A stretch of DNA of 64,000 nt from IMG/VR virus record IMGVR_UViG_3300020473_001965, positions 1 to 64,000 of that record; one strand, written 5' to 3'. The first letter of the stretch is position 1. The number at the start of each line of letters is the position of its first letter. The translations under genes were made by a program, and so were the position numbers. Shown one piece after another: positions 27,590-63,644 of this stretch. Below the pieces are notes generated by a model. That model did no database searches and was not told the DNA's origin. It saw only the letters and a program-made list of their open reading frames with translations.

Positions 27590-27603
27590 GTTTATCCCCG
27601 TGA

Positions 27604-28434: not shown

Positions 28435-28459
28435 GAGTACTAGACTTATCAATTGATGA

Positions 28460-28693
28460 TTAGCCTACTTGAACGTCACCATTGTAGCCGAACTCACTGT
28501 TAAGGAAGCCCTGAAGAGCCTGTGCCTCGCGAACCGTCATGGTGAGAGAGGTCTGGCTCGTGCTATAACCGGTATCCGTTGCTGGATTGGTCGTAATAGT
28601 GAGCGAGTTGCCCCCTGCCTTGTGAGCTGTTGCGTTGCGGGTGATGCCAAAGCTGAAGCGCTTGGTAGACTTAGTCTTAGTGTAATTACTCAT
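28460..28693 (-). CDS. Small hypothetical protein with own promoter and terminator
   Basis: AGGAG RBS; flanking signals. Confidence 0.7.
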   Translation of the reverse strand: MSNYTKTKSTKRFSFGITRNATAHKAGGNSLTITTNPATDTGYSTSQTSLTMTVREAQALQGFLNSEFGYNGDVQVG

Positions 28694-28780
28694 GTGTTCA
28701 TTTTCTCCTAAATTGTTGAACGTTGTGTCGGTATTTTCCGAACTCTGTAATACTACTGCAACGGGTCACCGTGTACAACT

Positions 28781-28910
28781 AAAAAGTTTTCGAAATTTTC
28801 TCCGGAAGAAATTTTTGAGTTTTACTTTTTTCCATTTTGAATAGCGCAGCTATTTTAGCTCTCTTCGTTGAAGGGGTAAAAAGTTTTCGGCAAGTTCTCC
28901 GGAAAAAAAT
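28781..28910. repeat. Imperfect direct repeat AAAAAGTTTTCG..TTCTCCGGAA(G/A)AAAT (x2)
   Basis: Copies at 28781 and 28878. Confidence 0.75.
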
Positions 28911-28920
28911 GCGTAGACTT

Positions 28921-29113
28921 AGGCCCATCCCAGGGGGTACCCCCCGACTGAATACGGGGGCTGGGGGGCCCCGCCCTCTGGGGCCGGGGGCCCTAGGCTC
29001 TAGATAGGGGGGCCTGGGGTAGGGCGCCCTAGGTCTGCACGGGTAGGGGCCCCCGGGGCTATGGTAGGGGCGCCCTTACTGTCACCGGTCATGTAGATGG
29101 GGCGCGCCCTAGG
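28921..29113. repeat. G-run and palindrome-rich block (GGGGGTACCCCC, TAGGGCGCCCTAGG variants); candidate genome terminus or packaging signal
   Basis: Non-coding, extremely GC-rich, repeated palindromes. Confidence 0.6.
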
Positions 29114-29387
29114 CCTGCATGAGCCGATTGTATGTCTCCCTAGGGATGAGCTTTCCCTCTACTGTGCCGTCGTAGTTCTTAAAGATAACGAAGTTAAAGC
29201 GATTCGACGGGACAAGCTTAACCAGCTCGCATGCCTGATGCTCATCCTCGGTTGTATAACTACCCATATCCCACAGGATGGTGAACCAGCCGTTGCCATG
29301 AACCTCTGTGACCTTCCCTTGATACTTCCTGCCACCGGCATATGTGATTCGGTCCTCTACCATGTCGCCTACTTTAAGCATTGTCAT
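29109..29387 (-). CDS. MKVGDLV-family KOW/SH3-like protein
   Basis: MLKVGDMV..GKV..ILWD. Confidence 0.7.
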   Translation of the reverse strand: MTMLKVGDMVEDRITYAGGRKYQGKVTEVHGNGWFTILWDMGSYTTEDEHQACELVKLVPSNRFNFVIFKNYDGTVEGKLIPRETYNRLMQA

Positions 29388-29406
29388 ACTCCTGCATTGC
29401 TTAGTG

Positions 29407-29443
29407 ACATTCTTATTATATCCCGCGCCGCGGCGTCTTACAT
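29407..29443 (-). promoter_or_regulatory. Repeated early promoter
   Basis: ATGTAA-N17-TATAAT; core identical to the 32151 copy. Confidence 0.75.
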
Positions 29444-29635
29444 TTAGCTCGTGACAACTGTTAGCCTTTTTTGCTCATGAACCGTTGTAGTGTCGCCTTC
29501 TAAGACTTCCCATGTACAGTACTCAGCATCGTAAGACAGTCGCTTGCGCCGTACGACGACCCCCACCCTGCCAGTGTCCAGCCTTCCTCCCCACCGAGAG
29601 ACCTTCCAGATCTTTACTAGATCACCGACTTTCAT
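29444..29635 (-). CDS. MKVGDLV-family cassette
   Basis: Starts in the ATGAAAGTCGGTGA overlap. Confidence 0.75.
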   Translation of the reverse strand: MKVGDLVKIWKVSRWGGRLDTGRVGVVVRRKRLSYDAEYCTWEVLEGDTTTVHEQKRLTVVTS

Positions 29636-29804
29636 TGATAACCTCTGCATTCACAAAATCAAGATCACTGCGGGTCCACGTATCAAATTCGCCATCAATA
29701 AGAAATTCAAACTTATAGCCATCTGCCCATGTACAAACACCAATCCAGCTGTGGCGATCCATTTCAGTGATATAATCTACTTTGACGCAATCACCGACTT
29801 TCAC
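29622..29804 (-). CDS. MKVGDLV-family cassette
   Basis: MKVGDCV...EVINESR. Confidence 0.75.
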   Translation of the reverse strand: MKVGDCVKVDYITEMDRHSWIGVCTWADGYKFEFLIDGEFDTWTRSDLDFVNAEVINESR

Positions 29805-29952
29805 TGATCACCTCTAAATCACGCAGAGAAAATTTCTCGCCACAATGCAGGATTACCCACGGGTGCCTTCGCGCCATGGGATTATCAGTAACAATCTCCA
29901 TAATTATTCCAGTTGTTCCATTTTTTAGTCTTACTAGATCACCGACTTGCAT
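29791..29952 (-). CDS. MKVGDLV-family cassette, 53 aa (not in ORF track)
   Basis: Hand-translated MQVGDLVRLK...LEVISESR. Confidence 0.75.
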   Translation of the reverse strand: MQVGDLVRLKNGTTGIIMEIVTDNPMARRHPWVILHCGEKFSLRDLEVISESR

Positions 29953-30118
29953 CGATCACCTCTTCAATTTGTGTATAGTGAAAAGCCTTCAACACACCGT
30001 CAACTTTGATAATAGGGTTCTTGAACGAATCCAGATCGACGACTAGTCCCAACTTGCCAGCTGAAGGACCGTTCCTTCGTGTCGAGTCGTGAAGCTTTAC
30101 TAGATCACCGACCTTCAT
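29939..30118 (-). CDS. MKVGDLV-family cassette, 59 aa (not in ORF track)
   Basis: Hand-translated MKVGDLVKLH...EEVIDASR. Confidence 0.75.
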   Translation of the reverse strand: MKVGDLVKLHDSTRRNGPSAGKLGLVVDLDSFKNPIIKVDGVLKAFHYTQIEEVIDASR

Positions 30119-30275
30119 TAATCACCTCAATCTGAGTCTCTGGCCAGACAACCATCGATCCATCACAGTCTAGAATATCCCACCAGCCTTCTGCAAACTC
30201 ACCATAACTGACTAGCACTCCGATTCGCTCTTTGTCGAAAGAGCCCATAAACTTTACAATGTCACCGACTTTCAT
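30105..30275 (-). CDS. MKVGDLV-family cassette, 56 aa (not in ORF track)
   Basis: Hand-translated MKVGDIVKF...IEVINEGR. Confidence 0.75.
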   Translation of the reverse strand: MKVGDIVKFMGSFDKERIGVLVSYGEFAEGWWDILDCDGSMVVWPETQIEVINEGR

Positions 30276-30465
30276 TGATGACCTCCATCAGAGATACCAT
30301 TGACTGGGTGAAGTCTCCGTTGTCCCAAAGGACGTCTGCACTCAGTTGCTTCCTCGTGCGACCACTGGTCCAGACCTGCATGACGACACCTGTCTGTCTC
30401 TCACCCGGTGTCACCGTCGATCCCCAAGTGCCTTTAAACTTTATCAGATCTCCAACCTTCAGCAC
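30262..30465 (-). CDS. MKVGDLV-family cassette
   Basis: MLKVGDLI...VLWDNG...EVINESR. Confidence 0.75.
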   Translation of the reverse strand: MLKVGDLIKFKGTWGSTVTPGERQTGVVMQVWTSGRTRKQLSADVLWDNGDFTQSMVSLMEVINESR

Positions 30466-30650
30466 ACCTTCTCCAACTCATCCTCGTCAAACTCAGCGAC
30501 CTGACCCAGAACCATGACTTTGGCTGCGGGAATGTAGAGCCGCTTTGCCAAAGCAATGACCACACCGATCTGGCCTTCTGCTTCCGGCCATGCAGAATGG
30601 ACACTGTTGTCATGAAGAATCCTGACCATGTCTCCTACAGCCAACTCCAC
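30459..30650 (-). CDS. MKVGDLV-family cassette
   Basis: ELAVGDMVRI..GVVI. Confidence 0.7.
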   Translation of the reverse strand: MELAVGDMVRILHDNSVHSAWPEAEGQIGVVIALAKRLYIPAAKVMVLGQVAEFDEDELEKVC

Positions 30651-30651
30651 T

Positions 30652-30765
30652 TCAGCACCCCACACAGTGCATGCACCATGGCATGTTGCAGGCTACCGCG
30701 ATGATGGCGGGAACGATTGCGATGATTGCGAGTGTTCTAGTGATGTCTTGAGCAGCTTGTGCCAT
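30652..30765 (-). CDS. 37-aa membrane peptide ending CMHCVGC (not in ORF track)
   Basis: MAQAAQDITRTLAIIAIVPAIIAVACNMPWCMHCVGC; GAGG RBS. Confidence 0.65.
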   Translation of the reverse strand: MAQAAQDITRTLAIIAIVPAIIAVACNMPWCMHCVGC

Positions 30766-30805
30766 TTTGAGTACCTCTTGGTGAGAGTGACGTAAGGCGT
30801 TTCCT

Positions 30806-30846
30806 CCTTACATTCTTATAATACCACGCTCACCCGAGTCTTACAC
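30806..30846 (-). promoter_or_regulatory. Repeated early promoter
   Basis: GTGTAA-N17-TATTAT with TG extension, ends GTAAGG. Confidence 0.8.
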
Positions 30847-31020
30847 TAACTCAAGCCACTCCGCCTTGACACACCACTGGCGTCCGTCTTCCCACATAAC
30901 GAGAATGTTGTCGTCTCTCATAAACTTCGGGAGGATCTTGACAACCAATCCGGAATGCGCGCGGTCTGGTTTGTGGCTGTACTTTACTAGAGAGCCTTCT
31001 TCGATTCTGGCTTTACCCAT
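30841..31020 (-). CDS. MKVGDLV-family cassette, 59 aa (not in ORF track)
   Basis: MGKARIEEGSLVKY..GLVV..VMWEDG..WLELV. Confidence 0.7.
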   Translation of the reverse strand: MGKARIEEGSLVKYSHKPDRAHSGLVVKILPKFMRDDNILVMWEDGRQWCVKAEWLELV

Positions 31021-31220
31021 ACTCCCTCCTTCATCCAGTAGTCGACGTCGCTACGAGAGACACCTTCAATTGAAGTCTCCAACGTCGTCCCCGGGATACC
31101 TGACCACAAGACCTCTACCCAATCACACGCTTCAGCGAACTCTTCGTCCGAGTCATAGGGCGTGATGTCCAGGATCACACCCGTCTCATCACCGCACTGC
31201 ACCAAGTCACCGACTTTCAC
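30987..31220 (-). CDS. MKVGDLV-family cassette
   Basis: MKVGDLV..GVIL..VLW. Confidence 0.75.
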   Translation of the reverse strand: MKVGDLVQCGDETGVILDITPYDSDEEFAEACDWVEVLWSGIPGTTLETSIEGVSRSDVDYWMKEGVWVKPESKKAL

Positions 31221-31410
31221 TGACTACCTCCAAAAACATTTCTTTCACTCTTCGCGTTGTCCCTGTCTCAGGCCACATGACGTGTACGATGTTGTACATA
31301 GAGTGCAGCCCTTGATCCTCATGCTTGACGACGATGCCGTGACCAGGTGGGTAGGCATGGATCCGACTCGAGTAGTTAACTATCTTTACTAGATCACCGA
31401 CTTTCATCAA
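31207..31410 (-). CDS. MKVGDLV-family cassette
   Basis: MKVGDLV...LEVVSESR. Confidence 0.75.
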   Translation of the reverse strand: MMKVGDLVKIVNYSSRIHAYPPGHGIVVKHEDQGLHSMYNIVHVMWPETGTTRRVKEMFLEVVSESR

Positions 31411-31624
31411 TCACCTCGAGCTCCACCACCGGGATGTTCAATTTGCAGTCGTCGTACATCACAACTGCATGCAGCTCCGGGTCTACCTCTCGCCAGTCAA
31501 TCATTGGACCCAGCTCATCTGTCCGCCAGACTTTCTTCTGAATCGTGTCGACAACAATTCCCGTACGGGTCGCGACCTGTTTTTCATCGATCTTCTTTAG
31601 TCTTACCAAATCACCTGTCTTCAT
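31394..31624 (-). CDS. MKVGDLV-family cassette
   Basis: MKTGDLV...LEVIDESR. Confidence 0.75.
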   Translation of the reverse strand: MKTGDLVRLKKIDEKQVATRTGIVVDTIQKKVWRTDELGPMIDWREVDPELHAVVMYDDCKLNIPVVELEVIDESR

Positions 31625-31802
31625 GTACTCTCTCCACTCTTTCTCGCATAATCCAGTTGCACCTGCCATCAGCCCACAGTACGACTGGGTCACGCCTCCC
31701 CGGCCGTGGGTCTGATCCTTGATTGTCTGACCAATCGATAACAACCCCTGTCATCCGACTCTCCGAAAAGAGGTTCTTCACTAAGTCACCAATCTTCAGC
31801 AT
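31611..31802 (-). CDS. MKVGDLV-family cassette
   Basis: MLKIGDLV..VLWADG..HEDR. Confidence 0.75.
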   Translation of the reverse strand: MLKIGDLVKNLFSESRMTGVVIDWSDNQGSDPRPGRRDPVVLWADGRCNWIMRERVERVHEDR

Positions 31803-31972
31803 GCCAATCTCAACTCGTCTTCCCATACACCAATCATATGCCCATCGTCCCAAAGGATCACGCAGAAACAGTACTCACCGTTAACTGTGTGCTCGGTTTC
31901 GACAACAATGCCAACCGGAAGTCCTTCGACCCCCGGTTCGCGTTTCATCTGTACGAGATCTCCTACGTTCAC
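31796..31972 (-). CDS. MKVGDLV-family cassette, 58 aa (not in ORF track)
   Basis: GTG start NVGDLVQM..GIVV..ILWDDG. Confidence 0.7.
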   Translation of the reverse strand: MNVGDLVQMKREPGVEGLPVGIVVETEHTVNGEYCFCVILWDDGHMIGVWEDELRLAC

Positions 31973-31983
31973 TCAGCTCTCCG

Positions 31984-32103
31984 TCAGTGTCCTGGGCAGT
32001 GCATGCAAAGATCGAGCACTTCAGCCAAAACGATGATTGTTGGGAACATAGCGACGATCACCGTTCCAGTGATCTGATCTTGATATTTCTTGAGTGTTTC
32101 CAT
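31984..32103 (-). CDS. 39-aa membrane peptide ending CMHCPGH (not in ORF track)
   Basis: METLKKYQDQITGTVIVAMFPTIIVLAEVLDLCMHCPGH; AAGGA RBS. Confidence 0.65.
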   Translation of the reverse strand: METLKKYQDQITGTVIVAMFPTIIVLAEVLDLCMHCPGH

Positions 32104-32150
32104 TGTCTCTTCCTTGGTGAGGAGGTTACGTTAGTAAGGTTGTTTTCCTT

Positions 32151-32191
32151 CCTTACATTCTTATTATATCCCGCGCCGCGGCGTCTTACAC
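32151..32191 (-). promoter_or_regulatory. Repeated early promoter
   Basis: 41-bp family copy. Confidence 0.8.
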
Positions 32192-32195
32192 TGGA

Positions 32196-32390
32196 TTACT
32201 CAGATTCCTTTACCACCTCGAGCCAGTCAGCCGGCTCCCAGTCTACGACCAGAGAGTCACACCACATCACACCGACTCGCCGCATGTTCCCACTAATCTT
32301 CTGGCGATCGTCAACAATTAGTCCAACCGATGGCGGCTCACCGCATGGGATCGATTCACCCGGCATTATGACGAGATCACCGGCTTTCAC
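32196..32390 (-). CDS. MKVGDLV-family cassette
   Basis: MKAGDLV..GLIV..VMW..WLEVV. Confidence 0.75.
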   Translation of the reverse strand: MKAGDLVIMPGESIPCGEPPSVGLIVDDRQKISGNMRRVGVMWCDSLVVDWEPADWLEVVKESE

Positions 32391-32690
32391 TTACGCCTCC
32401 CCCGACGCAGAGGACGACCCAGTCTCGGGTTGCGCTTCTTTACGAAGTTCCGATCGTGGTACCAAGCAGCACCGCAAGCCAGCAACACCGAGAACATCAG
32501 CATCATGAACGCTGAGAACTGAAAAAAGAATGATACTTCAGGACAATACATTATGCTGCTACCCTCCGAAACTTGAGGCGCACGTTCTTCGCTCCGCGAC
32601 TGCGCCAGATGTTGAACTGCCTGAAAGCCTCATCGCAGCTGTACGTGCCACTGTAGTGGCCACCGATAAACAACTCGTACTTGACCCGCA

Positions 32691-32858
32691 CTACTTCACC
32701 TCAGTGAGCGCGCTGGGAATGTGACGAGACAAATGATTTGACATGTCCCACTTGACGAGAATGATCGGGGTCTCATTGCCCCACTTCTTAGTCTTCGCCA
32801 ACACCCGACCAATTTGGCCGGGATAGCTGACATGCGTTACGCGAGCTCCAACCTTCAT
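32691..32858 (-). CDS. MKVGDLV-family cassette
   Basis: MKVGARV..GRV..VKWD. Confidence 0.7.
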   Translation of the reverse strand: MKVGARVTHVSYPGQIGRVLAKTKKWGNETPIILVKWDMSNHLSRHIPSALTEVK

Positions 32859-32950
32859 GAGATCACCTGTGCGATCGCCATGCAAACGCCGAGCTCTGAG
32901 ACGACGCCGAGGTATCCGAGAAGAATGTAGTTTCCGATTTGTTCAGTCAT
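32855..32950 (-). CDS. 31-aa hydrophobic peptide (not in ORF track)
   Basis: MTEQIGNYILLGYLGVVSELGVCMAIAQVIS; AAGGA RBS. Confidence 0.55.
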   Translation of the reverse strand: MTEQIGNYILLGYLGVVSELGVCMAIAQVIS

Positions 32951-32990
32951 GTTATTTCCTTGGTGAGGAGTTGATTTGTGGTAGGACCAT

Positions 32991-33031
32991 CCCTACATTT
33001 ATATAATACCACAACTTACCAAGTCTTACAT
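32991..33031 (-). promoter_or_regulatory. Repeated early promoter
   Basis: 41-bp family copy. Confidence 0.75.
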
Positions 33032-33107
33032 GAAAAAGCGAGGGATGATTCGTCTACCAACGTCGGAAGGCAGCATCCTCCGAATCTCGGCTCTCCCTCG
33101 GGAACCA

Positions 33108-33395
33108 TTACTGTTTATTATCTTCCTGTTTTCCCATTGGCGTATACCAGCTGGGCTTATTTTGCTCCATAATGATTGAAGCCTCCTTCATTATCTGCAG
33201 AATCTTGTCCGCTTGCTCCTCTGCTGTGCCGTTCACAAAACCTTCCAGCTCCTGCGGATGCGCTTCGAAGTAAAGCCGTCCGACCGTCATCTTCTCAGCT
33301 TCGGTCATCGACTCAACATTCCAGTACTTGTCTATGGCACACTTCTTCTTCCATGCGTAGTAAGCAGTGCACCCTCCAATAATCAGCTCTATCAT
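33108..33395 (-). CDS. Hypothetical protein
   Basis: ATGA-coupled to the upstream gene. Confidence 0.55.
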   Translation of the reverse strand: MIELIIGGCTAYYAWKKKCAIDKYWNVESMTEAEKMTVGRLYFEAHPQELEGFVNGTAEEQADKILQIMKEASIIMEQNKPSWYTPMGKQEDNKQ

Positions 33396-34153
33396 CGCCG
33401 GGACTGCCTTTTGCGCAGTCGCTTCGAGCTCACCGTCTGAGGCAATCCGTTGCACAAGATATCTTGCACGACTTCTGAGTATTGCGCTGTCACGTACGGG
33501 TCACTCGTTACAATAGCAGCATCATTATTCCATACCGCCAAGTCACCCTCAGAAAAACGAGGCTCAGTCAGGGTCTTAACAGCACCCTTGAACATGTTCT
33601 TGAGGCGGGACAACGCGCGGTTATCGAGAGTCCCGTGTGTGTCGTAGAACGCTTGAGCTGAACGATACTGCCTATAGTGACCCTGACGATGCTGCCAGTA
33701 CCAGTCACCGCGCTTCGTCCCATAGATGAGAAGTGCCTCTACGAGTCGTCGCTCATCATCGGTGAGCACGGGCAGACCATTGTCAGCCAACTCTTTGGCT
33801 TGTTCCAAGAGGCTAGTTAGAAAAGCCTCTTGCTTCGGGGAAAGTCGCCAGCCCTTCGACAACTTGTACTTGAAGTCACCGAGTGGTCCGGCCATGGCCT
33901 CCATCCCGGGCGTCACCATTGCTCGCTCAATCTCCGCAGTACGGTCAGCGTTATGAACGACAGGAGCACCCTGCTCGATCAGGCTGTCCAAGTACTTACG
34001 CTGGCCGGCCGAAAGACCCTTGTTGCGCTCGAGACGCGCGATCATGTCAGTCACGAATCGAGCCGACTTGTCATGCTCCATCCCAGCGTCAACCCAAAGC
34101 ACTAGCGTCTCCTTGGCCTCGCGCAACCGAACTTCCCGAGATTTCCTAGCCAT
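33392..34153 (-). CDS. Hypothetical early protein with C-terminal KOW-like segment
   Basis: GGAGG RBS; FSEGDLAVW..AIV. Confidence 0.7.
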   Translation of the reverse strand: MARKSREVRLREAKETLVLWVDAGMEHDKSARFVTDMIARLERNKGLSAGQRKYLDSLIEQGAPVVHNADRTAEIERAMVTPGMEAMAGPLGDFKYKLSKGWRLSPKQEAFLTSLLEQAKELADNGLPVLTDDERRLVEALLIYGTKRGDWYWQHRQGHYRQYRSAQAFYDTHGTLDNRALSRLKNMFKGAVKTLTEPRFSEGDLAVWNNDAAIVTSDPYVTAQYSEVVQDILCNGLPQTVSSKRLRKRQSRR

Positions 34154-58009: not shown

Positions 58010-58219
58010 CTAATCTGGGTTATTGAATTGTTCAATATCTTTCTTTCCCGCCTTCTGAACATTTTCTGCACGAATCCGTAGTACCTCGCCTTCGTGTAAA
58101 ATAGTGGCGATCTTCTCCCAGGTGTGATATTCAACAAGCAACCCTATGTTCCAAGCTTCATATCTTGAGAAGAAAGATTTGGGCTTGACTTTAAATCTTA
58201 CTAAATCACCAGCCTTCAT
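58010..58219 (-). CDS. MKVGDLV-family cassette
   Basis: MKAGDLV..GLLV. Confidence 0.75.
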   Translation of the reverse strand: MKAGDLVRFKVKPKSFFSRYEAWNIGLLVEYHTWEKIATILHEGEVLRIRAENVQKAGKKDIEQFNNPD

Positions 58220-58220
58220 T

Positions 58221-58424
58221 CTACTTGCTCCATGACACTCCGATTCGGCCGTCTTTGTCAAGTACTTCAAGAAGCGGGCCAGATTTTTGCCAACGTTCCC
58301 AAGCATCGTCAACGTCATATTCTAGCATATGATCATCAGCCCTATCACAGTACTCTTTAAACGTTAAGACTCTAATTACAAGCAACTCTCCATCGTCAAT
58401 CAAGTCCCCGGGTTTTAGATCCAC
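58221..58424 (-). CDS. MKVGDLV-related protein
   Basis: LKPGDLI. Confidence 0.6.
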   Translation of the reverse strand: MDLKPGDLIDDGELLVIRVLTFKEYCDRADDHMLEYDVDDAWERWQKSGPLLEVLDKDGRIGVSWSK

Positions 58425-58666
58425 CTAACACCTCACAGCGATGCCTAACAACGCAATTATGACTAAGCATGCTCCAAAAGCTTTTCCAATCAAAACCCAG
58501 TCTTCTTTATCGAGATATTTACCCATCACCCCTTTCTCTTCTTTCACGAATTTCTTTTTGTAAATCTATCAAATCATACGGTCCAGTGCGTTTTTTCCTC
58601 ACTAGGTAAAAGAACATCACAAACGCAAACGAAACTGTAAATGCAGCTGCTACAGCAAGAAGCGAC

Positions 58667-58852
58667 TCAAGCACTGATCACCTCCAACCTTCGTGACTTA
58701 TCGGTCTGTATAGACCCGTCTTGCCACATCACCTTAACATCTTTCCGACCAGCATACACACCCACCTCAATAATCATTCCAACCCAGTCATATCCGGTTG
58801 GTGCCCATTTCTGGGTTTTGAAATCGAACTTTACCAAATCACCGACTTTCAT
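58667..58852 (-). CDS. MKVGDLV-family cassette
   Basis: MKVGDLV..VMWQDG..LEVISA. Confidence 0.75.
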   Translation of the reverse strand: MKVGDLVKFDFKTQKWAPTGYDWVGMIIEVGVYAGRKDVKVMWQDGSIQTDKSRRLEVISA

Positions 58853-59048
58853 TGACTACCTCGAGAGATTCTGGGTATTCTTCTTCAGCTGGATATCTAT
58901 CGTTCCAGCACACTACAGCATATCTTTCTTGTGGGTCTCCAAAATTGTCAACATCAGTATGAAAATCAATTATGACACCCACCCATTGCTTTTCATGTGT
59001 GCTTACCCACGCGTCTTCTTTTGGTCTAACTAAATCCCCAACTCTCAT
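58839..59048 (-). CDS. MKVGDLV-family cassette
   Basis: MRVGDLV...LEVVNESR. Confidence 0.75.
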   Translation of the reverse strand: MRVGDLVRPKEDAWVSTHEKQWVGVIIDFHTDVDNFGDPQERYAVVCWNDRYPAEEEYPESLEVVNESR

Positions 59049-59179
59049 GATCGGACCTTCATCACATCATCATGATCAAATAGCTCGCCAGTATGAATTT
59101 TTACTCTGTCAAGGTCGAACCAAACAACAATGCCTAAAGAATTATCTCGTACAACCTTGATCAAATCACCTACTTTCAT
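59045..59179 (-). CDS. MKVGDLV-family cassette, 44 aa (not in ORF track)
   Basis: MKVGDLIKVVRDNSLGIVV... Confidence 0.7.
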   Translation of the reverse strand: MKVGDLIKVVRDNSLGIVVWFDLDRVKIHTGELFDHDDVMKVRS

Positions 59180-59489
59180 CACATCCTCCGCATCCGTGGT
59201 CGATTTCTTTGTCGATTCCTTTAAGCTTAACCCACCCGCTCCAGATTATTGGGACTGCAAGCCAGTGTATACATAGCAACCAAGAGGCTGGTGCACCGGC
59301 GTAAAAGGCGGGATGAACATTATTTCCGAGAAATATAAAAAGCAAAGGGAAAAGCACATCTTCAATAATCTCCCATCCGATAATAATTATCACCAACGCG
59401 AGTCCGTGTTGCTTCATCGTACGTTTGATTGTGCCCCACCGAAAATGATCCAGCTTGTGGCCTAATCTATCTTTGATCCATTTTAACAT
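59166..59489 (-). CDS. Membrane protein embedded in the cassette array
   Basis: WEIIEDVLFP..LCIHW; ends DESR in the junction. Confidence 0.7.
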   Translation of the reverse strand: MLKWIKDRLGHKLDHFRWGTIKRTMKQHGLALVIIIIGWEIIEDVLFPLLFIFLGNNVHPAFYAGAPASWLLCIHWLAVPIIWSGWVKLKGIDKEIDHGCGGCDESR

Positions 59490-59667
59490 CTTCGCTTACC
59501 TTTCTCACATATCCAGCCGGCCACCACTTTACCACACCGCAACAAAGCACATTGATAAAGTGCATGGTCCCTGTACTTTCTTCGGGTTTTGCCTTTTCAA
59601 TCAGCACGCCGAGAATAAGATCTTCTTGGCCTTTCACGCCAACTTCCACTAAATCACCGACTTTCAC
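59467..59667 (-). CDS. MKVGDLV-family cassette
   Basis: MKVGDLV..GVLI. Confidence 0.75.
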   Translation of the reverse strand: MKVGDLVEVGVKGQEDLILGVLIEKAKPEESTGTMHFINVLCCGVVKWWPAGYVRKVSEDVKMDQR

Positions 59668-59812
59668 TGATCAGCTCCAACCACCCTTCGGCAATATACC
59701 TTACCTCACACGTCGTTTGGTCAAGAACACCTACCAACGCTGTATTGTCCACTTTTGCTACCAAATAACATTTGCCAAACCGCTTGTGCTTTACCAAGTC
59801 ACCGACTTTCAT
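59654..59812 (-). CDS. MKVGDLV-family cassette, 52 aa (not in ORF track)
   Basis: MKVGDLVKHK...LELISESR. Confidence 0.75.
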   Translation of the reverse strand: MKVGDLVKHKRFGKCYLVAKVDNTALVGVLDQTTCEVRYIAEGWLELISESR

Positions 59813-59979
59813 TTAATCACCATAAGGTAGCGAGTTGCGACTTCTTCGAGTATCTTAGTTTGACCGTGTGCAGTCCACAATATGCGGGCGGCCTTCCAAT
59901 CAAATGGGCGAATGCTGAGTATTACACCAGACCCTTGTAGCGTACCGAATTTATGTTTTACTAAATCACCGACTTTCAC
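59809..59979 (-). CDS. MKVGDLV-family cassette, 56 aa (not in ORF track)
   Basis: GTG KVGDLVKHK..GVIL..ILW. Confidence 0.75.
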   Translation of the reverse strand: MKVGDLVKHKFGTLQGSGVILSIRPFDWKAARILWTAHGQTKILEEVATRYLMVIK

Positions 59980-60069
59980 TGATCACTAGCGTTCCAGCAA
60001 TTGCACGACGAACAGCATCGGCCGCCGGCAAAAATGTCTGCCATAAATCTAAAAAACTTCTTAATCATA

Positions 60070-60480
60070 TTACCTGTCTTCATCATCTTCTCCTCTAGCA
60101 TAAATATCTCGTCCTTCTTCATATGCCTTTAGAACTGAGACAAGATTGAGAATATCTGAGCATGCGTCAATCCCGATGGTCTGCATCTCCATCAGGGCTT
60201 TTAGCTCCATCGACTCAAGATCTACAGCGACCTCACCGCTGCCGTAATCGACGACCATTTTCTTGATAATCGGCCCCACATGAATTCTATGCTCTGTTGT
60301 GGGCTTATGATTTGTGAATCCTTTTTCATACGCAAACAATTCTACAGCTTCCTTAGCCTCTCTTAGACCGCACTTCGTCTCACTTCGAACTGCTTTGATT
60401 GCAGCGATTTTTTTTGGGCTTGAATCATCGAGCCACTCGATTAGTGAATTATATGTCGACCTTCTAATTCTTAGAATCAT
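60070..60480 (-). CDS. Protein with ribosomal protein bL12 (L7/L12) C-terminal-like domain
   Basis: KIAAIKAVRSETKCGLREAKEAVE. Confidence 0.75.
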   Translation of the reverse strand: MILRIRRSTYNSLIEWLDDSSPKKIAAIKAVRSETKCGLREAKEAVELFAYEKGFTNHKPTTEHRIHVGPIIKKMVVDYGSGEVAVDLESMELKALMEMQTIGIDACSDILNLVSVLKAYEEGRDIYARGEDDEDR

Positions 60481-60808
60481 TTGTCACCTCCAATAGTGCC
60501 TCAGCAAGTATCGCTGACTGTGTCACGTTCATATCAAAAGGCGGAGTTTCTCCAGATTCGACGCCGCCATGTTTGACAATCAAAGCTTTCAATATTCCAA
60601 CTGGAACCCAACCGTATACTGTGCCGGTGGGGTCGTCAGGTGCCTCTGCGTATCCGATAATCATGGGCTCAACAGCTGATGGGAAACCCACCTCCACCTC
60701 AGTGTACGGGCCCTGATTGTCTCTGGGGTTAGAATAACTGGTATCACTAGCTTGAACACTCATGTTAAACCCAGATTTACAAAACAAACGCTTATACATC
60801 TTTCTCAT
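60464..60808 (-). CDS. Phage hypothetical protein
   Basis: MSVQAS..VEVGFP..VYGWVP..HGG. Confidence 0.7.
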   Translation of the reverse strand: MRKMYKRLFCKSGFNMSVQASDTSYSNPRDNQGPYTEVEVGFPSAVEPMIIGYAEAPDDPTGTVYGWVPVGILKALIVKHGGVESGETPPFDMNVTQSAILAEALLEVTNDSKN

Positions 60809-60986
60809 TTAGCTTCTTGGCTCTCCATTCCTTAAATTTTTCAGTTGACATTCCACCGATGACGTCTTCTAATTGTGCATCGTGCAACTCTGTTTCGTCA
60901 GGGAAGATTGATGCAGATTCGACCGTGTGTGTTCTAAGTTTCTTCTTTAACCAATCCCTTAAGTTGACAATATTATTGACTTTCAC
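60792..60986 (-). CDS. Small protein with double-glycine leader-like motif
   Basis: ELHDAQLEDVIGG. Confidence 0.55.
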   Translation of the reverse strand: MKVNNIVNLRDWLKKKLRTHTVESASIFPDETELHDAQLEDVIGGMSTEKFKEWRAKKLNEKDV

Positions 60987-61170
60987 TTACAACATCCCAA
61001 TACTCTTTCAGGTCACTCTTGATCCTGCCGTCTGGCAGCATTACTTTAATCGCATTTCCCGAAACTTCATATACTAGAAAGGGCTCTTCTGTGTATGGAA
61101 CTCCATGCTTGCTAGTCTTTTTCATCCAGAACGCAATGTACTTCATTTGCACTAAGTCACCAGCTTTCAC
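60973..61170 (-). CDS. MKVGDLV-family cassette
   Basis: MKAGDLV...DVVSESQ. Confidence 0.75.
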   Translation of the reverse strand: MKAGDLVQMKYIAFWMKKTSKHGVPYTEEPFLVYEVSGNAIKVMLPDGRIKSDLKEYWDVVSESQ

Positions 61171-61370
61171 TTAGATTCTCCAGTGTGGGCCGTGCCTCTC
61201 GTTTGAAATTCAATTAAGATGGGTTCACCCTTTTGGTCTACCATCTTTTGGAAATTAAAGTCGGCGGCGCCCAAGAAGACTGATGATCCATCGTGGAAAG
61301 TCACGCATACATGATGCACGTCTGGCTTTGCCTTCTTTATTCCATCAAACATTTTAACGTGAACAGTCAA
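61167..61370 (-). CDS. Hypothetical protein
   Basis: Coupled ORF. Confidence 0.5.
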   Translation of the reverse strand: MTVHVKMFDGIKKAKPDVHHVCVTFHDGSSVFLGAADFNFQKMVDQKGEPILIEFQTRGTAHTGESK

Positions 61371-61383
61371 CTTAAATTCCTTT

Positions 61384-61608
61384 CTACAGTTGTTCCTCTA
61401 GTCTCTCAAGAATCCACAAGTCGGGATCACCTGTTCTGGCTTTTGCGATACCATAAGGCATTTCCCCTGAGTTGCAAAAGTATTCGTACAGCTTATCGTA
61501 AGCTGTCGTTCCATAGAAGTCTAAATCTCCTGCAATAAAGTCTGGCATCAGAGTGCTTTCATCGATAGTCAACCCAGCTCCAGCATAAATCTCATTTAAC
61601 ATCTTCAC
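61384..61608 (-). CDS. Phage hypothetical protein
   Basis: GEMPYGIAKARTGDPDLWI. Confidence 0.7.
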   Translation of the reverse strand: MKMLNEIYAGAGLTIDESTLMPDFIAGDLDFYGTTAYDKLYEYFCNSGEMPYGIAKARTGDPDLWILERLEEQL

Positions 61609-61613
61609 TCCTC

Positions 61614-61805
61614 CTAGTATACCACTTTAAGTTTAAGGTAGCCAAAAGACTGATCTGACATCTCAGCACTCATAGCTTCCAAATCTTCGACATGAGAATC
61701 ATATTCAGCTGAGTTCTCATCCGTTGTCTTCATGATCTTAATGACTTCATTAAAGTAAGCGCGAGCTGACTCGCGGAGTTGTTCAAGATTGGCTTCTTCA
61801 TTCAT
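61614..61805 (-). CDS. Hypothetical protein
   Basis: AGGAGG RBS after promoter 61820-61860. Confidence 0.6.
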   Translation of the reverse strand: MNEEANLEQLRESARAYFNEVIKIMKTTDENSAEYDSHVEDLEAMSAEMSDQSFGYLKLKVVY

Positions 61806-61819
61806 AGCTTTTACCTCCT

Positions 61820-61860
61820 GGCTATGATTATATTATACTATAAGCCGCTTGATCTTACAC
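61820..61860 (-). promoter_or_regulatory. Promoter of the GTGTAA family
   Basis: GTGTAA-N17-TATAAT. Confidence 0.65.
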
Positions 61861-62300
61861 TAAACTGGATACTCAAAATTAGCTGTTACTATGTTTGTTG
61901 CTATCTCAGTTGCGCCATTGCGAAGATGAAATCTTCTAGCCATATCTGTCAGAGGAGACAGTGTTACGACCCTTTGGATTCCCCAGTCAGACTCCTTTAC
62001 ATACTTTAGAAGTGCATTGATTATGGCTTTCCCTGCGCCGCGGCGCAAACTCCACACTGTATATGGGATACAAATGCGGCCGTCGCTGAGTGTATATGAA
62101 CTCAGCGTCATAATATCAACTGGTATGGCATGTGTTCTTGCAACACAGCAGAAAGCGACGTAGTCTCCGGAAAGATCTCTTAGACCAAAGACTTCTCGAC
62201 CCGGGTACGTTTTAAAAGCTACTCCTAGCTCTGGTCTTACTGGATCACTATCACGCCATAGCTTGGGTGTATTGCTTACATTCTCAAGCACGTATTCCAT
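61860..62300 (-). CDS. GNAT-like phage protein
   Basis: DPVRP, YTVWS..RGAGK, VTLSP..FHLRNGA. Confidence 0.65.
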   Translation of the reverse strand: MEYVLENVSNTPKLWRDSDPVRPELGVAFKTYPGREVFGLRDLSGDYVAFCCVARTHAIPVDIMTLSSYTLSDGRICIPYTVWSLRRGAGKAIINALLKYVKESDWGIQRVVTLSPLTDMARRFHLRNGATEIATNIVTANFEYPV

Positions 62301-62301
62301 A

Positions 62302-62502
62302 TCAAAACTCGCTTAACTTCAGTGGTTCAAGTCTATCTAGCTGTGTCCACGAAACTCCTGAATGCCATAACACCTTGGCCACTCGGACCATCACTGATGA
62401 GTCGTCAGGGTGATGCATTTTAAAATCGAGCAGAACTCCGGCATTCCGGCCTCGTATGTCGACGTCATTTCTTTTTATTCGTACCAAGTCACCTATTTTC
62501 AT
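62302..62502 (-). CDS. MKVGDLV-family cassette
   Basis: MKIGDLV..VLWHSG. Confidence 0.75.
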   Translation of the reverse strand: MKIGDLVRIKRNDVDIRGRNAGVLLDFKMHHPDDSSVMVRVAKVLWHSGVSWTQLDRLEPLKLSEF

Positions 62503-62701
62503 CTACAACTACTCTCCCAGGATTATCAATAGCATCTCTCATAGTCAGGCCGAAGTGCTCAGCAACAGCTAAAACTATTCTTTTCATTTGAGACGACTTT
62601 CCAGTGATAACAATAAAAGGCACGTCGAAGTCATTACAGCACCTTGATATAATATCGGAAACATCTTTGTGTCTCACCCCATGAAGATCAACTGTTTTCA
62701 T
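62489..62701 (-). CDS. Stand-alone Smr-domain-like protein
   Basis: VDLHG..VITG..NPG. Confidence 0.75.
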   Translation of the reverse strand: MKTVDLHGVRHKDVSDIISRCCNDFDVPFIVITGKSSQMKRIVLAVAEHFGLTMRDAIDNPGRVVVDENR

Positions 62702-62873
62702 CGATCACCACCCGGAGTCTAATTGACTGATCATGTGTGTAATGCCATTCGCCAGGGATTCCCTCCCAATCGACTACAACATAGTCCTTTGTTATCTTTA
62801 TAACTCTTCCCGATGCCACGTTGTGCTTCCACATAGGAGACATCTCAACTCTATCACCTACCTTGAAATTCAT
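62688..62873 (-). CDS. MKVGDLV-family cassette
   Basis: MNFKVGDRV..GRV..VDWE. Confidence 0.7.
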   Translation of the reverse strand: MNFKVGDRVEMSPMWKHNVASGRVIKITKDYVVVDWEGIPGEWHYTHDQSIRLRVVIDENS

Positions 62874-63441
62874 CACTCTGCTCTGTTGTTCTGGACCACC
62901 ATGGCGGAAGATCTCCCGATCTCCACTTAGCAAATCTTACCTTGTCCTTTAAATAATATTCTCTATAGCAGTCAACAGGATCATCACTTACCTTGTAATC
63001 TTCTAACATACAAATTGAGAACGGTGATAATCCTTTCGACTGTAATCGAGGCGGATGATTATTGTGTAGCCAACGATGCACCCTAGAAGACTTGTGGGTT
63101 TTGCCATATCGCTTTTCATACTCTTCACAAAGTGCTAATCCCAGCTTAGAGTGCCAGACATAATTGTCTAAGCTCTCTCTAGTCCAAACACTGCATGGGT
63201 GATTGATGTGTGTCATCTTCCACTCGGGCTGAAAAACGGTGGGAACTTCTTGATAAAGAAAAGCTTTTGCTTCTTTCTGCGTTCTAAAATCTTTTATATC
63301 CTTCTTAAGGTAGTCAAGCCAGCCCAACCAGTGCGCTGTACACAGCATCTGGCCTGACTCCAGAATCATCTTCAAGACGTGCTTGTCACAGTGGTAACTA
63401 GCTGCAATTTCTGGGTCGTTGTCAAGAATAAAGATGTTCAT
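62854..63441 (-). CDS. Pyrimidine-dimer glycosylase (DenV-like) family protein
   Basis: MNIFILD..HCDKHVLKMILESGQML, HINHPC, YREYY..PPWW. Confidence 0.8.
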   Translation of the reverse strand: MNIFILDNDPEIAASYHCDKHVLKMILESGQMLCTAHWLGWLDYLKKDIKDFRTQKEAKAFLYQEVPTVFQPEWKMTHINHPCSVWTRESLDNYVWHSKLGLALCEEYEKRYGKTHKSSRVHRWLHNNHPPRLQSKGLSPFSICMLEDYKVSDDPVDCYREYYLKDKVRFAKWRSGDLPPWWSRTTEQSDEFQGR

Positions 63442-63644
63442 ATTGTTTCTTTTCTCTCTGTCACTATTCTTAGTGTGCTGCAATCAACCCACTGAATTTT
63501 GCCATCCCAAAGCAGTATTTCAGCAGATCGGGTAGTGGCGCCAGTTCGAGACAACCTCAAAACGACGCCAAGATCAACATCAAACTTTTCTCGCACATCA
63601 TCTTTAGCTGAGTACCATTTGACGAGATCACCCTTTCTGATCAT
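63438..63644 (-). CDS. MKVGDLV-family cassette
   Basis: MIRKGDLVKW..GVVL..LWDG. Confidence 0.7.
   Translation of the reverse strand: MIRKGDLVKWYSAKDDVREKFDVDLGVVLRLSRTGATTRSAEILLWDGKIQWVDCSTLRIVTERKETI

What the first reader, a model, noticed from the sequence alone, without database searches (positions are those of the whole stretch)
29109..32890. Array of hypervariable KOW/SH3-like mini-gene cassettes joined by a conserved RBS/start/stop junction repeat
Seen: 16 genes of about 53-92 aa here, several missed by the ORF track, sharing MKVGDLV..G(I/V)V..V.W.DG..LEV(I/V)xESR but otherwise unalignable by eye. Successive genes are joined by a roughly 33-nt repeat (minus strand GAGGTGATCAATGAAAGTCGGTGATCTAGTAAAG) that encodes the upstream EVINESR-stop, the RBS and the next ATG in a 14-nt overlap. 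Near-identical copies are at 29612, 29781, 29929, 30095, 30252, 31199 and 31385. The DNA is a repeat-spacer array whose spacers are variable protein cores. Inference: recombination at the junction adds, deletes or swaps cassettes that stay translationally coupled, giving an integrase-free diversifying library of small beta-barrel binders (anti-defence, or NusG/ribosomal KOW mimics).
Basis: partly seen in the sequence, partly recalled or inferred. Interest (0 to 1): 0.87.

Follow-up and report, generated by a model that had tools for sequence, protein, structure and literature searches.

The report
Recombining mini-gene arrays in marine phage
A very large uncultured ocean phage carries about 25 tiny, highly diverged genes of one small beta-barrel protein family, joined by a short shared stop/ribosome-site/start overlap, and closely related phages differ by whole genes removed or swapped exactly at that overlap; this is an unusual variant of known phage gene shuffling, and what the proteins do is still unknown.

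Summary
On the minus strand of 29109-32890 lie 15 clear members and 1 marginal member of one family of 53-90 aa proteins. Most are joined by a 14-nt overlap, ATGAAAGTCGGTGA, which encodes ..ESR-stop for the upstream gene and MKVGD for the downstream gene. The GAGGTG ribosome site doubles as Glu-Val of the last strand.

- The region is four promoter-headed operons, not one array.
- A second cluster of 10 members lies at 58010-63644.
- The family is very large: 667 members in 109 viral loci and 2554 clusters at 50% identity.

AlphaFold predicts a five-strand SH3/KOW-like barrel. No Pfam or PHROG family matches.

Close relatives from Tara Oceans and other marine metagenome assemblies (94-99% DNA identity) lack exactly 3, 2 or 1 cassettes, with breakpoints inside the junction. 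More distant relatives have reshuffled the cassette order. So recombination at the junction is supported.

- The cassettes are not hypervariable; orthologues are under purifying selection (pN/pS 0.19).
- The junction is not a nucleotide-level repeat; coding and ribosome-site constraint explain its conservation.
- I found no homogenisation of junctions within genomes.

Function is unknown. This is a new variant of modular shuffling as known from PeSL elements in T4-type phages.

The parts
32989..33034 (-). Promoter-like repeat heading unit A (TGTAAGAC, 13-nt spacer, extended -10 TATTAT, then ATGTA)
   Evidence: Repeat family D3; motif scan finds 9 sites against 0.05 expected, all on the minus strand
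32855..32950 (-). A0: 31-aa hydrophobic leader peptide, ATGA overlap with A1
   Evidence: Read from the sequence
32691..32858 (-). A1: marginal family member (MKVGARV..), 55 aa
   Evidence: HMM E 0.015; sequence
32387..32691 (-). A2 (46 aa) and A3 (54 aa, membrane-like): non-family genes inside unit A
   Evidence: ORF list and sequence; no HMM hit
32196..32390 (-). A4: family member, 64 aa; GTGA overlap with A3; its tail EVVKESE looks like a decayed junction
   Evidence: HMM E 5e-15; sequence
32149..32194 (-). Promoter-like repeat heading unit B, with palindrome CGCCGCGGCG between the -35-like and -10 elements
   Evidence: Repeat families D3/D5; motif scans
31984..32103 (-). B0: 39-aa hydrophobic leader peptide ending ..CMHCPGH
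30841..31972 (-). Unit B cassettes: B1 31796-31972, B2 31611-31802, B3 31394-31624, B4 31207-31407, B5 30987-31220, B6 30841-31020
   Evidence: HMM E 1e-11 to 8e-7; gene starts; 14-nt overlaps at B2/B3, B3/B4 and B4/B5; AF2 model of B6 pLDDT 89.5
30804..30849 (-). Promoter-like repeat heading unit C
30652..30765 (-). C0: 37-aa hydrophobic leader peptide ending ..CMHCVGC
29444..30644 (-). Unit C cassettes: C1 30459-30644, C2 30262-30465, C3 30105-30275, C4 29939-30118, C5 29791-29952, C6 29622-29804, C7 29444-29635. Five consecutive 14-nt-overlap junctions.
   Evidence: HMM; junction copies; AF2 model of C2 pLDDT 86.7
29622..30118 (-). Polymorphic cassettes. C4-C5-C6 (483 nt) are absent from L110/L111/L112. 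C5-C6 (317 nt) are absent from L113/L118/L119/L120. Breakpoints fall in the junction copies at 30095-30128, 29929-29967 and 29612-29650.
   Evidence: blastn against close relatives; junction alignment A4
29401..29446 (-). Promoter-like repeat heading unit D; left breakpoint of a module replacement or insertion in relatives
29109..29381 (-). D1: divergent family member, 90 aa. It is replaced in L110/L111. In L113 four extra genes precede it.
   Evidence: HMM E 6e-5
58010..63644 (-). Second cluster with 10 family members: 63438-63644, 62302-62502, 60973-61170, 59809-59979, 59654-59812, 59467-59667, 59045-59179, 58839-59048, 58667-58852, 58010-58219. Non-family genes are interspersed.
   Evidence: HMM; sequence; 8 core junction matches
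59809..59979 (-). Polymorphic cassette (167 nt), absent from L130-L133 at 97-99% identity; breakpoints in the junction
59166..59179 (-). The same 14-nt overlap after a non-family membrane protein (59166-59489), which therefore ends ..CDESR-stop
   Evidence: Sequence; pattern match

Best explanation
**What it is.** Two clusters of short operons in an uncultured marine jumbo phage. The contig is 235,672 bp, and an assembly from another sample that is identical over the 8 kb compared (window 27000-35000) is 296,665 bp. The operons encode an old, very large paralogous family of stand-alone ~60-aa SH3/KOW-like beta-barrel proteins.

**The junction.** Neighbouring genes are locked together by a 14-nt overlap. 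GAGGTG is both Glu-Val of the last strand and the ribosome-binding site. ATGAAAGTCGGTGA is both x-E-S-R-stop of the upstream gene and M-K-V-G-D of the downstream gene. Start-to-start spacing is always 1 mod 3, so any two junctions can be joined in register without breaking a reading frame.

**How it works.** Three selective pressures hold this stretch constant at almost every gene boundary: the protein N-terminus, the stop codon and translation initiation. That leaves about 25-38 nt of near-identity between unrelated gene bodies. Homologous recombination or replication slippage between junctions then deletes, inserts or exchanges whole cassettes. The promoter-like repeats do the same for whole operon modules, as PeSLs do.

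**Shown here:** the anatomy, family membership, the predicted fold, purifying selection on each cassette, and cassette indels and swaps at junctions in natural relatives.

**Inferred:** translational coupling by termination-reinitiation; early, strong expression from the repeated promoters; a role of the proteins as small binding modules used in host takeover or counter-defence; and any adaptive value of the turnover.
For: **Anatomy and chance**
- Gene map and junction read directly from the sequence.
- The 14-nt core occurs 17 times against 0.11 expected.

**Family size and junction regularity**
- 667 members in 109 viral loci.
- 287 of 317 adjacent family pairs (90.5%) overlap by exactly 14 nt.
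- 2554 clusters at 50% identity reach E <= 1e-3, almost all 52-75 aa.

**Fold**
- AF2 pLDDT 86.7 and 89.5, five strands.
- Foldseek TM 0.6-0.68 to SH3/KOW/Tudor-type barrels.
- The family profile hits the uL24 KOW region at E 0.0034.

**Real genes**
- pN/pS is 0.19 pooled over cassettes against 0.16 for neighbouring genes.

**Recombination at junctions**
- Three alleles of unit C exist in independent assemblies at ~94-95% identity: C2-C3-C4-C5-C6-C7, C2-C3-C4-C7 and C2-C3-C7. The two alignments overlap by 34-36 nt exactly at the junction.
- A one-cassette indel occurs in cluster 2 at 97-99% identity.
- L043 joins orthologues of a cluster-2 cassette, C3 and C5, with homology ending at the junction.
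- A homologous downstream neighbour is kept in 2 of 15 cassette pairs at 75-90% aa identity and 1 of 43 at 60-75%. For non-family genes the figures are 8 of 13 and 14 of 39.
- Identity along the array is mosaic: a 100%-identical tract runs from promoter A to the A3/A4 boundary, C4 is nearly identical, and C2 is strongly diverged in L113.

**Portability**
- The junction also follows non-family genes.

**Known precedent**
- T4 recombines at 6-10 bp microhomologies (PMC9391042).
- PeSL repeats mediate indels in T4-type phages (PMC2839356 and PMC4122927).
Against: - No experiment or transcript data: promoter activity, timing and translational coupling are all inferred.
- Function is unknown. There are no Pfam or PHROG hits and every homologue is 'hypothetical'.
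- The direction of each indel (gain or loss) is unresolved.
- All three indels in unit C share the right-hand breakpoint, so they may not be fully independent events.
- An average junction pair is only 67% identical over 40 nt, so only some pairs are good recombination substrates.
- In the adjacency test, anchor pairs below ~75% identity may be paralogues rather than orthologues.
- The 109 loci were ascertained by the junction pattern itself.
- The two AF2 models share the same family alignment, so they are not independent.
Confidence: 0.72

Rival explanations
1. A dedicated, selected diversification system. The junction is maintained because it serves as a recombination linker. The phage population thereby keeps a combinatorial library of binders, working like an integron without an integrase.
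For: - Joining is frame-safe, because spacing is always 1 mod 3.
- Cassette turnover is faster than for neighbouring genes.
- The junction has been placed after non-family genes.
- The pool of cassette types is very large.
- The Gly codon is GGT in 576 of 665 members, including 136 with no long upstream ORF to terminate.
Against: - Coding, stop and SD constraints explain the junction conservation, and synonymous sites just outside the overlap are free.
- There is no homogenisation of junctions within genomes.
- No dedicated recombinase was found.
- Each cassette is under ordinary purifying selection.
- Selection for evolvability is hard to demonstrate and is not needed to explain the data.
Confidence: 0.25
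2. The arrays grew by recent tandem duplication followed by very rapid (hypermutational or positively selected) divergence of the cores. The junctions are simply the parts that have not yet diverged.
For: - The head-to-tail arrangement and the shared junction.
- A few recent within-locus duplicates exist: L104 at 98.6% and L069 at 92%.
Against: - Only 23 of 317 adjacent pairs show any BLASTP similarity, with a median of 37.5% identity.
- Orthologues have pN/pS 0.19.
- The same cassette types recur at 75-89% identity in different neighbourhoods in other phages.
- No reverse transcriptase or template repeat was found.
Confidence: 0.05
3. The cassette-number differences are metagenome assembly artefacts, caused by contigs collapsing or chimerising at the repeated junction.
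For: The junction is a repeated sequence, and all relatives are short-read assemblies.
Against: - The repeat is only ~34-38 nt, well below the k values of 119-141 carried in several contig names and below read length.
- Each allele was recovered independently from several samples and assemblers: 3 for the three-cassette deletion, 4 for the two-cassette deletion, 4 for the cluster-2 deletion and at least 8 for the full form.
- The alleles also differ from the window by ~5% point substitutions in the flanks.
Confidence: 0.03

Closest known systems
PeSL (promoter-early stem-loop) cassettes in the hyperplastic regions of T4-type phages (Arbiol et al. 2010, PMC2839356; Comeau et al. 2014, PMC4122927)
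   Same: - Short conserved sequences recur at gene boundaries among small, mostly unknown genes.
- Indels and replacements between close relatives have their breakpoints in those sequences.
- The window also has a repeated promoter-like motif, twice with a palindrome between the -35-like and -10 elements, and unit D is swapped at that motif.
   Different: - Here the main recombining sequence is not an intergenic promoter/terminator. It is a coding stop/SD/start overlap shared by two reading frames.
- It links members of one protein family and preserves translational coupling and frame.
- The phage is not shown to be T4-like.
Internal-protein (IP) loci of T-even phages: variable proteins that share a conserved N-terminal capsid-targeting sequence (recalled from my own knowledge of Repoila et al. 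1994 and of Comeau and Krisch; not retrieved here)
   Same: - Tandem small genes with a conserved 5' coding segment and otherwise unrelated bodies.
- The conserved segment has been proposed as a site of recombinational shuffling.
- At least one IP is a counter-defence protein.
   Different: - Here the gene bodies share a fold.
- The conserved segment is part of a beta-strand, not a cleaved targeting peptide.
- The genes overlap by 14 nt.
- The family is orders of magnitude larger.
Integron gene-cassette arrays
   Same: An array of small, promoterless cassettes read from an upstream promoter, with cassette number and order varying between relatives.
   Different: - No IntI integrase was found.
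- No attC-like inverted repeat was found.
- The junction is a coding direct repeat, and the mechanism would be general homologous recombination.
Gene 'accordions' and microhomology-mediated amplification or deletion in phage T4 (Srikant et al. 2022, PMC9391042)
   Same: Recombination between short homologies rapidly changes the copy number of small accessory genes.
   Different: - Those are amplifications of identical copies at arbitrary 6-10 bp microhomologies.
- Here the units are old, diverged paralogues joined by a standard junction.
Small stand-alone SH3/KOW/Tudor-like barrels: PetP, PsaE, R67 DHFR, B. subtilis SPbeta YorP, phage DUF4314 and DUF2158 proteins
   Same: Similar size and five-strand barrel topology. 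Foldseek TM is 0.6-0.76. The weak KVGD..V...G..G..V sequence resemblance is to the longer ribosomal protein uL24.
   Different: - No significant sequence-family membership: best Pfam KOW 12.6 bits against a 22.3 cut-off, Foldseek E >= 0.026 for PDB.
- The fold is too generic to transfer a function.

Membership tests
SH3-like / KOW small beta-barrel (fold level) | Five-stranded, tightly curved antiparallel barrel of about 50-70 residues | tested here: met
   AF2 models of C2 and B6 have pLDDT 86.7 and 89.5, with strand order E-E-E-E-(3-10)-E. Foldseek TM is 0.6-0.68 to PetP, eS4 KOW, R67 DHFR and Tudor. These are predictions only.
Pfam KOW (PF00467) / NusG-Spt5 family | Sequence match above the curated threshold | tested here: not met
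   Best KOW hit is 12.6 bits against a 22.3 cut-off, E 0.13. The family profile against PDB gives NusG at E 0.11 and uL24 at E 0.0034, over the N-terminal half only.
Pfam KOW (PF00467) / NusG-Spt5 family | KOW attached to an NGN domain or embedded in a ribosomal protein | tested here: not met
   Members are stand-alone proteins of 52-90 aa.
PeSL-type modular shuffling | Repeated early-promoter motif with an associated stem-loop in regions of small accessory genes | tested here: inconclusive
   The motif TGTAAGAY-N13-(TG)-TATWAT occurs 9 times against 0.05 expected, all on the coding strand. A 10-nt palindrome sits in the spacer of 2 copies. The -35 element is not TTGACA-like and the generic sigma-70 scan misses it. 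Promoter and terminator activity are not testable here.
PeSL-type modular shuffling | Indel or replacement breakpoints between close relatives lie in the repeated motif | tested here: met
   Unit D: homology with L110/L111/L113 ends at window 29438, inside the promoter-like repeat 29401-29446. A 100%-identity tract starts at promoter A.
PeSL-type modular shuffling | Host genome is a T4-type myovirus | not tested
   No structural or replication hallmark gene lies in the window. The best phage hits to PrkA and ThyX are 30-41% identical and fall in unrelated phages.
Integron | IntI tyrosine recombinase next to the array | tested here: not met
   None of the 30 larger ORFs scanned against Pfam shows an integrase domain. 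Only the 64-kb window was examined.
Integron | attC sites (imperfect inverted repeats) between cassettes | tested here: not met
   No inverted repeats at the junctions. The junction is a coding direct repeat.
CRISPR-like repeat-spacer array | Non-coding repeats of fixed length separating non-coding spacers of near-constant length | tested here: not met
   The units are ORFs under purifying selection. Spacing runs from 148 to 187 nt and more. Conservation follows codon positions.
Diversity-generating retroelement | Reverse transcriptase plus a template/variable repeat pair | tested here: not met
   No RT domain was found. The only direct repeats longer than the junction are the ~46-nt promoter-like repeats; no template/variable pair was found.
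Translationally coupled overlapping genes (termination-reinitiation) | Upstream stop codon within or next to the downstream start region, with an SD just upstream | tested here: met
   287 of 317 adjacent pairs overlap by 14 nt and 20 by 4 nt. A GGAGGTG-like SD is conserved at -10..-5.
Translationally coupled overlapping genes (termination-reinitiation) | Downstream translation depends on upstream translation | not testable with these tools
   Needs reporter fusions.

The most novel reading that the evidence does not exclude
The stop/SD/start overlap is a natural, frame-preserving 'standard connector' that selection maintains partly because it allows any cassette to be joined to any other. Under this reading, a clade of ocean jumbo phages shares a population-wide combinatorial library of thousands of small SH3-like binders. 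These would be host-takeover or counter-defence effectors, gained and lost by general recombination: functionally an integron without an integrase.
Probability: 0.25. Interest if true: 0.85.

Novelty: new variant of a known kind. Interest (0 to 1): 0.66.

Why it matters
- The old idea that phage genes are shuffled at short conserved 'linker' sequences at gene boundaries has few clean natural examples. Here the linker is defined to the nucleotide, its conservation has a mechanistic explanation (two reading frames plus a ribosome site), and wild populations show cassette gain, loss and exchange exactly at it.
- It uncovers a very large, unannotated family of ~60-aa beta-barrel proteins in ocean viruses: 2554 clusters at 50% identity, with no Pfam or PHROG family. 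Many of these genes are easily missed by gene callers because they overlap.
- The connector is a ready-made design for translationally coupled synthetic operons.
- If the proteins prove to be host-takeover or counter-defence factors, the arrays would be a rich source of small protein inhibitors.

Tried and rejected
- Megablast of the 4-kb region against 50,697 phage records: no match.
- tblastn of one cassette against the same collection: no match.
- PHROGs for 10 cassettes: nothing. Pfam: only sub-threshold KOW, SH3, Cul7 and DUF7464 hints.
I replaced it with a DNA pattern scan.
- Concerted evolution of junctions within genomes: tested and rejected, 67.5% against 66.7% identity.
- Recent tandem duplication: rejected.
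- Hypervariability or positive selection: rejected.
- attC-like inverted repeats: none.
- The generic sigma-70 scan does not detect the repeated promoter-like motif, and terminator hits are not above shuffles.
- The G+C-rich repeats at 28956-29076 fold no better than shuffles, z 0.22.
- Four literature searches found no earlier description of this family or junction. The library is incomplete, so this is not proof of absence.
- Host identification was not achieved.

Full report
**1. Where the window comes from**

The window is bases 1-64000 of IMG/VR contig IMGVR_UViG_3300020473_001965 (JGI Ga0211625_10000014, 235,672 bp). Loci L042 and L073 are 100% identical to it, and their contig coordinates equal the window coordinates. 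An ENA assembly from another sample is 296,665 bp long and is 100% identical over the 8 kb compared. The genome is therefore probably that of a jumbo phage.

No cultured relative was found:
- Megablast of the region finds nothing among 50,697 phage records.
- PrkA and ThyX reach only 30-41% identity to scattered phages.

The window carries a PrkA/SpoVR/DUF444 trio, DnaJ, ThyX, five tRNAs and a tmRNA. G+C ranges from 36% to 60%.

**2. The observation**

All features are on the minus strand. Reading 33100 to 29050 gives four transcription units. Each is headed by a ~46-nt conserved promoter-like repeat (families D3/D5). The motif is TGTAAGAY, 13 nt, then an extended -10. It occurs 9 times in the window against 0.05 expected, always on the coding strand.

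| Unit | Order of genes |
|---|---|
| A | leader peptide A0, A1, two non-family genes (A2, A3), A4 |
| B | leader peptide B0, B1 to B6 |
| C | leader peptide C0, C1 to C7 |
| D | D1 |

An HMM built from the obvious members and iterated on all stop-to-stop ORFs of the window gives 23 members at E < 1e-3, all on the minus strand. A larger HMM, built from 667 members found in related phages, gives the following for the finding's range:
- 14 members at E <= 8e-7;
- D1 at E 6e-5;
- A1 at E 0.015, which is marginal.

Ten further members lie at 58010-63644.

The junction is as described. The upstream gene ends ..L-E-V-I-N-E-S-R-stop. The downstream M-K-V-G-D is read from the same ATGAAAGTCGGTGA one base later, and GAGGTG lies 4 nt upstream of the start codon. 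The 14-nt core occurs 17 times against 0.11 expected.

The same overlap follows a non-family membrane protein at 59166-59179, which therefore ends ..CDESR. A family gene with the same upstream sequence also follows a Cys-rich peptide at 59966-59979. The x-E-S-R tail is thus imposed by the next gene's start region. It is not part of the fold.

**3. The proteins**

- Pairwise identity among 24 members is 18-36%.
- AlphaFold2 on the family alignment gives a five-strand barrel for C2 (pLDDT 86.7) and for the most divergent member, B6 (pLDDT 89.5). The two runs share the same alignment, so they are not independent.
- In the C2 model the last strand is M-E-V. The ribosome-binding site GAGGTG therefore encodes the Glu-Val of strand 5, and N-E-S-R is a tail outside the modelled strands.
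- Foldseek finds only generic small barrels in the PDB: PetP at E 0.026 and TM 0.64, the eS4 KOW domain, R67 DHFR, Tudor, HspQ and YorP. Among viral models it finds many unnamed proteins with A0A516-series UniProt accessions, which I recall (unchecked) come from uncultured marine viruses.
- The family profile hits the uL24 KOW region at E 0.0034 and NusG at E 0.11.
- Pfam KOW is below threshold, and PHROGs finds nothing.

'SH3/KOW-like' is therefore right at the level of fold. Membership of the KOW family is not established.

**4. How big the family is**

- A profile search of 1.84 billion representative proteins gives 2554 clusters at E <= 1e-3. Nearly all are stand-alone proteins of 52-75 aa, and a few are two-domain fusions formed at the junction.
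- All named homologues are 'hypothetical', none has a Pfam domain, and most come from marine metagenome assemblies, some labelled Tara.
- Scanning IMG/VR for the junction pattern gives 109 loci on about 90 contigs of up to 293 kb. These hold 667 members.
- Of 317 adjacent family pairs, 287 overlap by exactly 14 nt and 20 by 4 nt. The longest run is 13 consecutive cassettes.
- Within this contig the strict pattern occurs only in the two clusters.

**5. Why the junction is conserved**

I took 344 14-nt-overlap junctions that do not match the search pattern, which removes ascertainment by the pattern itself. Their information content is high only from -10 to +19. Just past the overlap the synonymous positions are free: the third base of Val-7 carries 0.2 bit and the Leu-6 codon 0.6-0.7 bit.

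Inside the overlap, the third base of Val-3 carries 0.8-1.0 bit, against 0.5 bit in members with no long upstream ORF. This fits a modest pull from the upstream Arg codon. In the window, starts without the 14-nt overlap use GGA, GGC or GGG for Gly and GTT or GTA for Val.

Outside the junction, nucleotide identity is at the random level of 27%. Inside it is 67%, and it is no higher within a genome than between genomes (67.5% against 66.7%).

The junction is therefore held by three things: the N-terminal strand, the overlapping stop and the ribosome site. It is not held by homogenisation or by being a nucleotide 'repeat' as such.

**6. Are the cassettes hypervariable?**

No. Between the window and relatives at ~95% identity, pooled pN/pS is 0.19 for the cassettes and 0.16 for neighbouring non-family genes. 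Adjacent cassettes are almost never similar: 23 of 317 pairs give any BLASTP hit, with a median identity of 37.5%. The arrays are assemblies of old, diverged paralogues, each conserved in its own right.

**7. Recombination at the junction**

This is the part of the interpretation that the data support best.

(a) *Close relatives, unit C.* Three independent assemblies (L110, L111, L112; ~95% identity) align to window 35000 down to 30095 and then continue at 29645. The two alignments share the 34-nt junction. These relatives lack exactly C4-C5-C6, which is 483 nt. Four other assemblies (L113, L118, L119, L120) align down to 29931 and continue at 29649. They lack exactly C5-C6, which is 317 nt. 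At least eight assemblies carry the six-cassette form.

(b) *Close relatives, cluster 2.* L130-L133 (97-99% identity) lack exactly the cassette at 59809-59979 (167 nt). The two alignments overlap by 38 nt at the junction.

(c) *A more distant phage.* L043 places an 80% orthologue of that cluster-2 cassette directly upstream of a 75% orthologue of C3, which is followed by an 89% orthologue of C5. Homology stops at the junction in each case.

(d) *Across all loci.* The table shows how often the downstream neighbour is also homologous when two genes in different loci are homologous.

| aa identity of the anchor pair | Family cassettes | Non-family genes of 90 aa or more, same loci |
|---|---|---|
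| 99% or more | 19 of 19 | 10 of 11 |
| 90-99% | 6 of 8 | 2 of 2 |
| 75-90% | 2 of 15 | 8 of 13 |
| 60-75% | 1 of 43 | 14 of 39 |
| 45-60% | 1 of 139 | 6 of 63 |

The lower bins may include paralogue pairs.

(e) *Mosaic identity along the array.* A 100%-identical tract runs from promoter A to the A3/A4 boundary. C4 is nearly identical in L113, while C2 in L113 is a strongly diverged allele.

(f) *Whole modules.* Promoter-bounded modules are also exchanged. Unit D is replaced in L110/L111, and in L113 four extra genes precede D1. The left breakpoint lies in the promoter-like repeat.

An assembly artefact is unlikely. The repeat is ~34-38 nt, shorter than the k values of 119-141 seen in contig names. 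In addition, each allele recurs in several samples and assemblers.

**8. Mechanism**

Start-to-start spacing at 14-nt junctions is always 1 mod 3 (169, 148, 166, 157 and 187 nt). Any in-register exchange between two junctions therefore leaves the upstream gene ending x-E-S-R-stop and the downstream gene starting M-K-V-G-D.

T4 is known to recombine at microhomologies of only 6-10 bp, which produces amplifications and deletions (PMC9391042). [quoted passage not shown]

No integrase, reverse transcriptase or attC-like structure was found.

Four steps are inferred rather than shown:
- translational coupling by termination-reinitiation;
- early, strong transcription;
- a role as small binding modules in host takeover or counter-defence;
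- whether the turnover is adaptive or a neutral by-product.

**9. Verdict**

- Right on the fold, the junction anatomy and junction-mediated cassette gain, loss and exchange.
- Wrong on 'hypervariable' and on the junction being more than constraint explains.
- Untested on function.

The closest known system is PeSL-mediated modular shuffling. From my own recollection, the IP loci of T-even phages, with their conserved 5' coding segment, are also close. This case differs in that the recombining element is a dual-frame coding connector inside a single, very large, unannotated protein family. I rate it a new variant of a known kind, with interest about 0.66.

Noticed in passing
window 5354-5720 (-): A phage-encoded tmRNA: ARAGORN tag peptide ANNNYHYEQRLAA, Rfam RF00023 at 111.7 bits, full length.
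   Followed up: partly
window 9400-13855 (-): A PrkA-like AAA kinase, a SpoVR-like protein and a DUF444 (YeaH-like) protein lie in a row. This bacterial stress/sporulation-associated trio is carried by a phage. The best phage hits, at 30-33%, are in Thermus phages and huge uncultured phages.
   Followed up: partly
window 32855-32950, 31984-32103, 30652-30765 (-); also about 59976-60069 (-): Each of units A, B and C opens with a 31-39 aa hydrophobic peptide, two of them ending in a C-M-H-C-x-G motif. A Cys-rich peptide also precedes a cassette in cluster 2. This may be a second small-gene family at the head of these operons.
   Followed up: no
window 29442, 30845, 32190, 33030, 34326, 42954, 44122, 45778, 61859 (top coordinates, - strand): A phage-specific promoter-like motif, TGTAAGAY-N13-(TG)TATWAT, occurs 9 times against 0.05 expected, all on the coding strand. 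The -35 region is unlike TTGACA, which may point to a phage-specific or modified recognition element.
   Followed up: partly
window 35835-36890 (-), 17896-17971 (-): A tRNA cluster (Leu-taa, Met-cat, Lys-ttt, Arg-tct) plus tRNA-Thr. The tRNA segments are the most widely conserved DNA across the related viral contigs, at 82-95% identity.
   Followed up: no
window 1-64000: G+C is strongly heterogeneous: 36-39% at 6-22 kb, up to 60% at 42-46 kb and 42-43% at 54-64 kb. The two cassette clusters sit in regions of different composition, ~50% against ~43%.
   Followed up: no
window about 32400-33000: This tract is 100% identical to relatives that are otherwise ~95% identical. It is bounded by promoter A and the A3/A4 gene boundary, which suggests a recent recombination tract.
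   Followed up: partly
window 40341-40562 (-): A weak family match (E 0.0014-0.01) in the C-terminal half of the longer ORF 40341-40739. This may be a fused or ancestral SH3-like domain.
   Followed up: no
proteins P0001, P0039, P0041 (metagenome representatives): Two-domain proteins of 117-129 aa in which two family domains are fused in frame across the junction, for example ..LEVVKQ followed by VKVGDLV... The junction can evidently be read through after a small frame change.
   Followed up: partly
window 41562-44045 (-): An AAA_5 (MoxR/CobS-like) ATPase lies next to a DUF2201 metallopeptidase/VWA-like protein, in the most G+C-rich part of the window.
   Followed up: no
window 28956-29076: Three ~22-nt G+C-rich direct repeats sit just downstream of D1. 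As RNA they fold no better than shuffled sequence, z 0.22.
   Followed up: partly
window 20330-21361 (-), 7646-9022 (-): A full-length DnaJ with J domain, Zn finger and C-terminal domain, plus a weak GroEL-like PHROG hit. The phage appears to carry chaperone genes.
   Followed up: no
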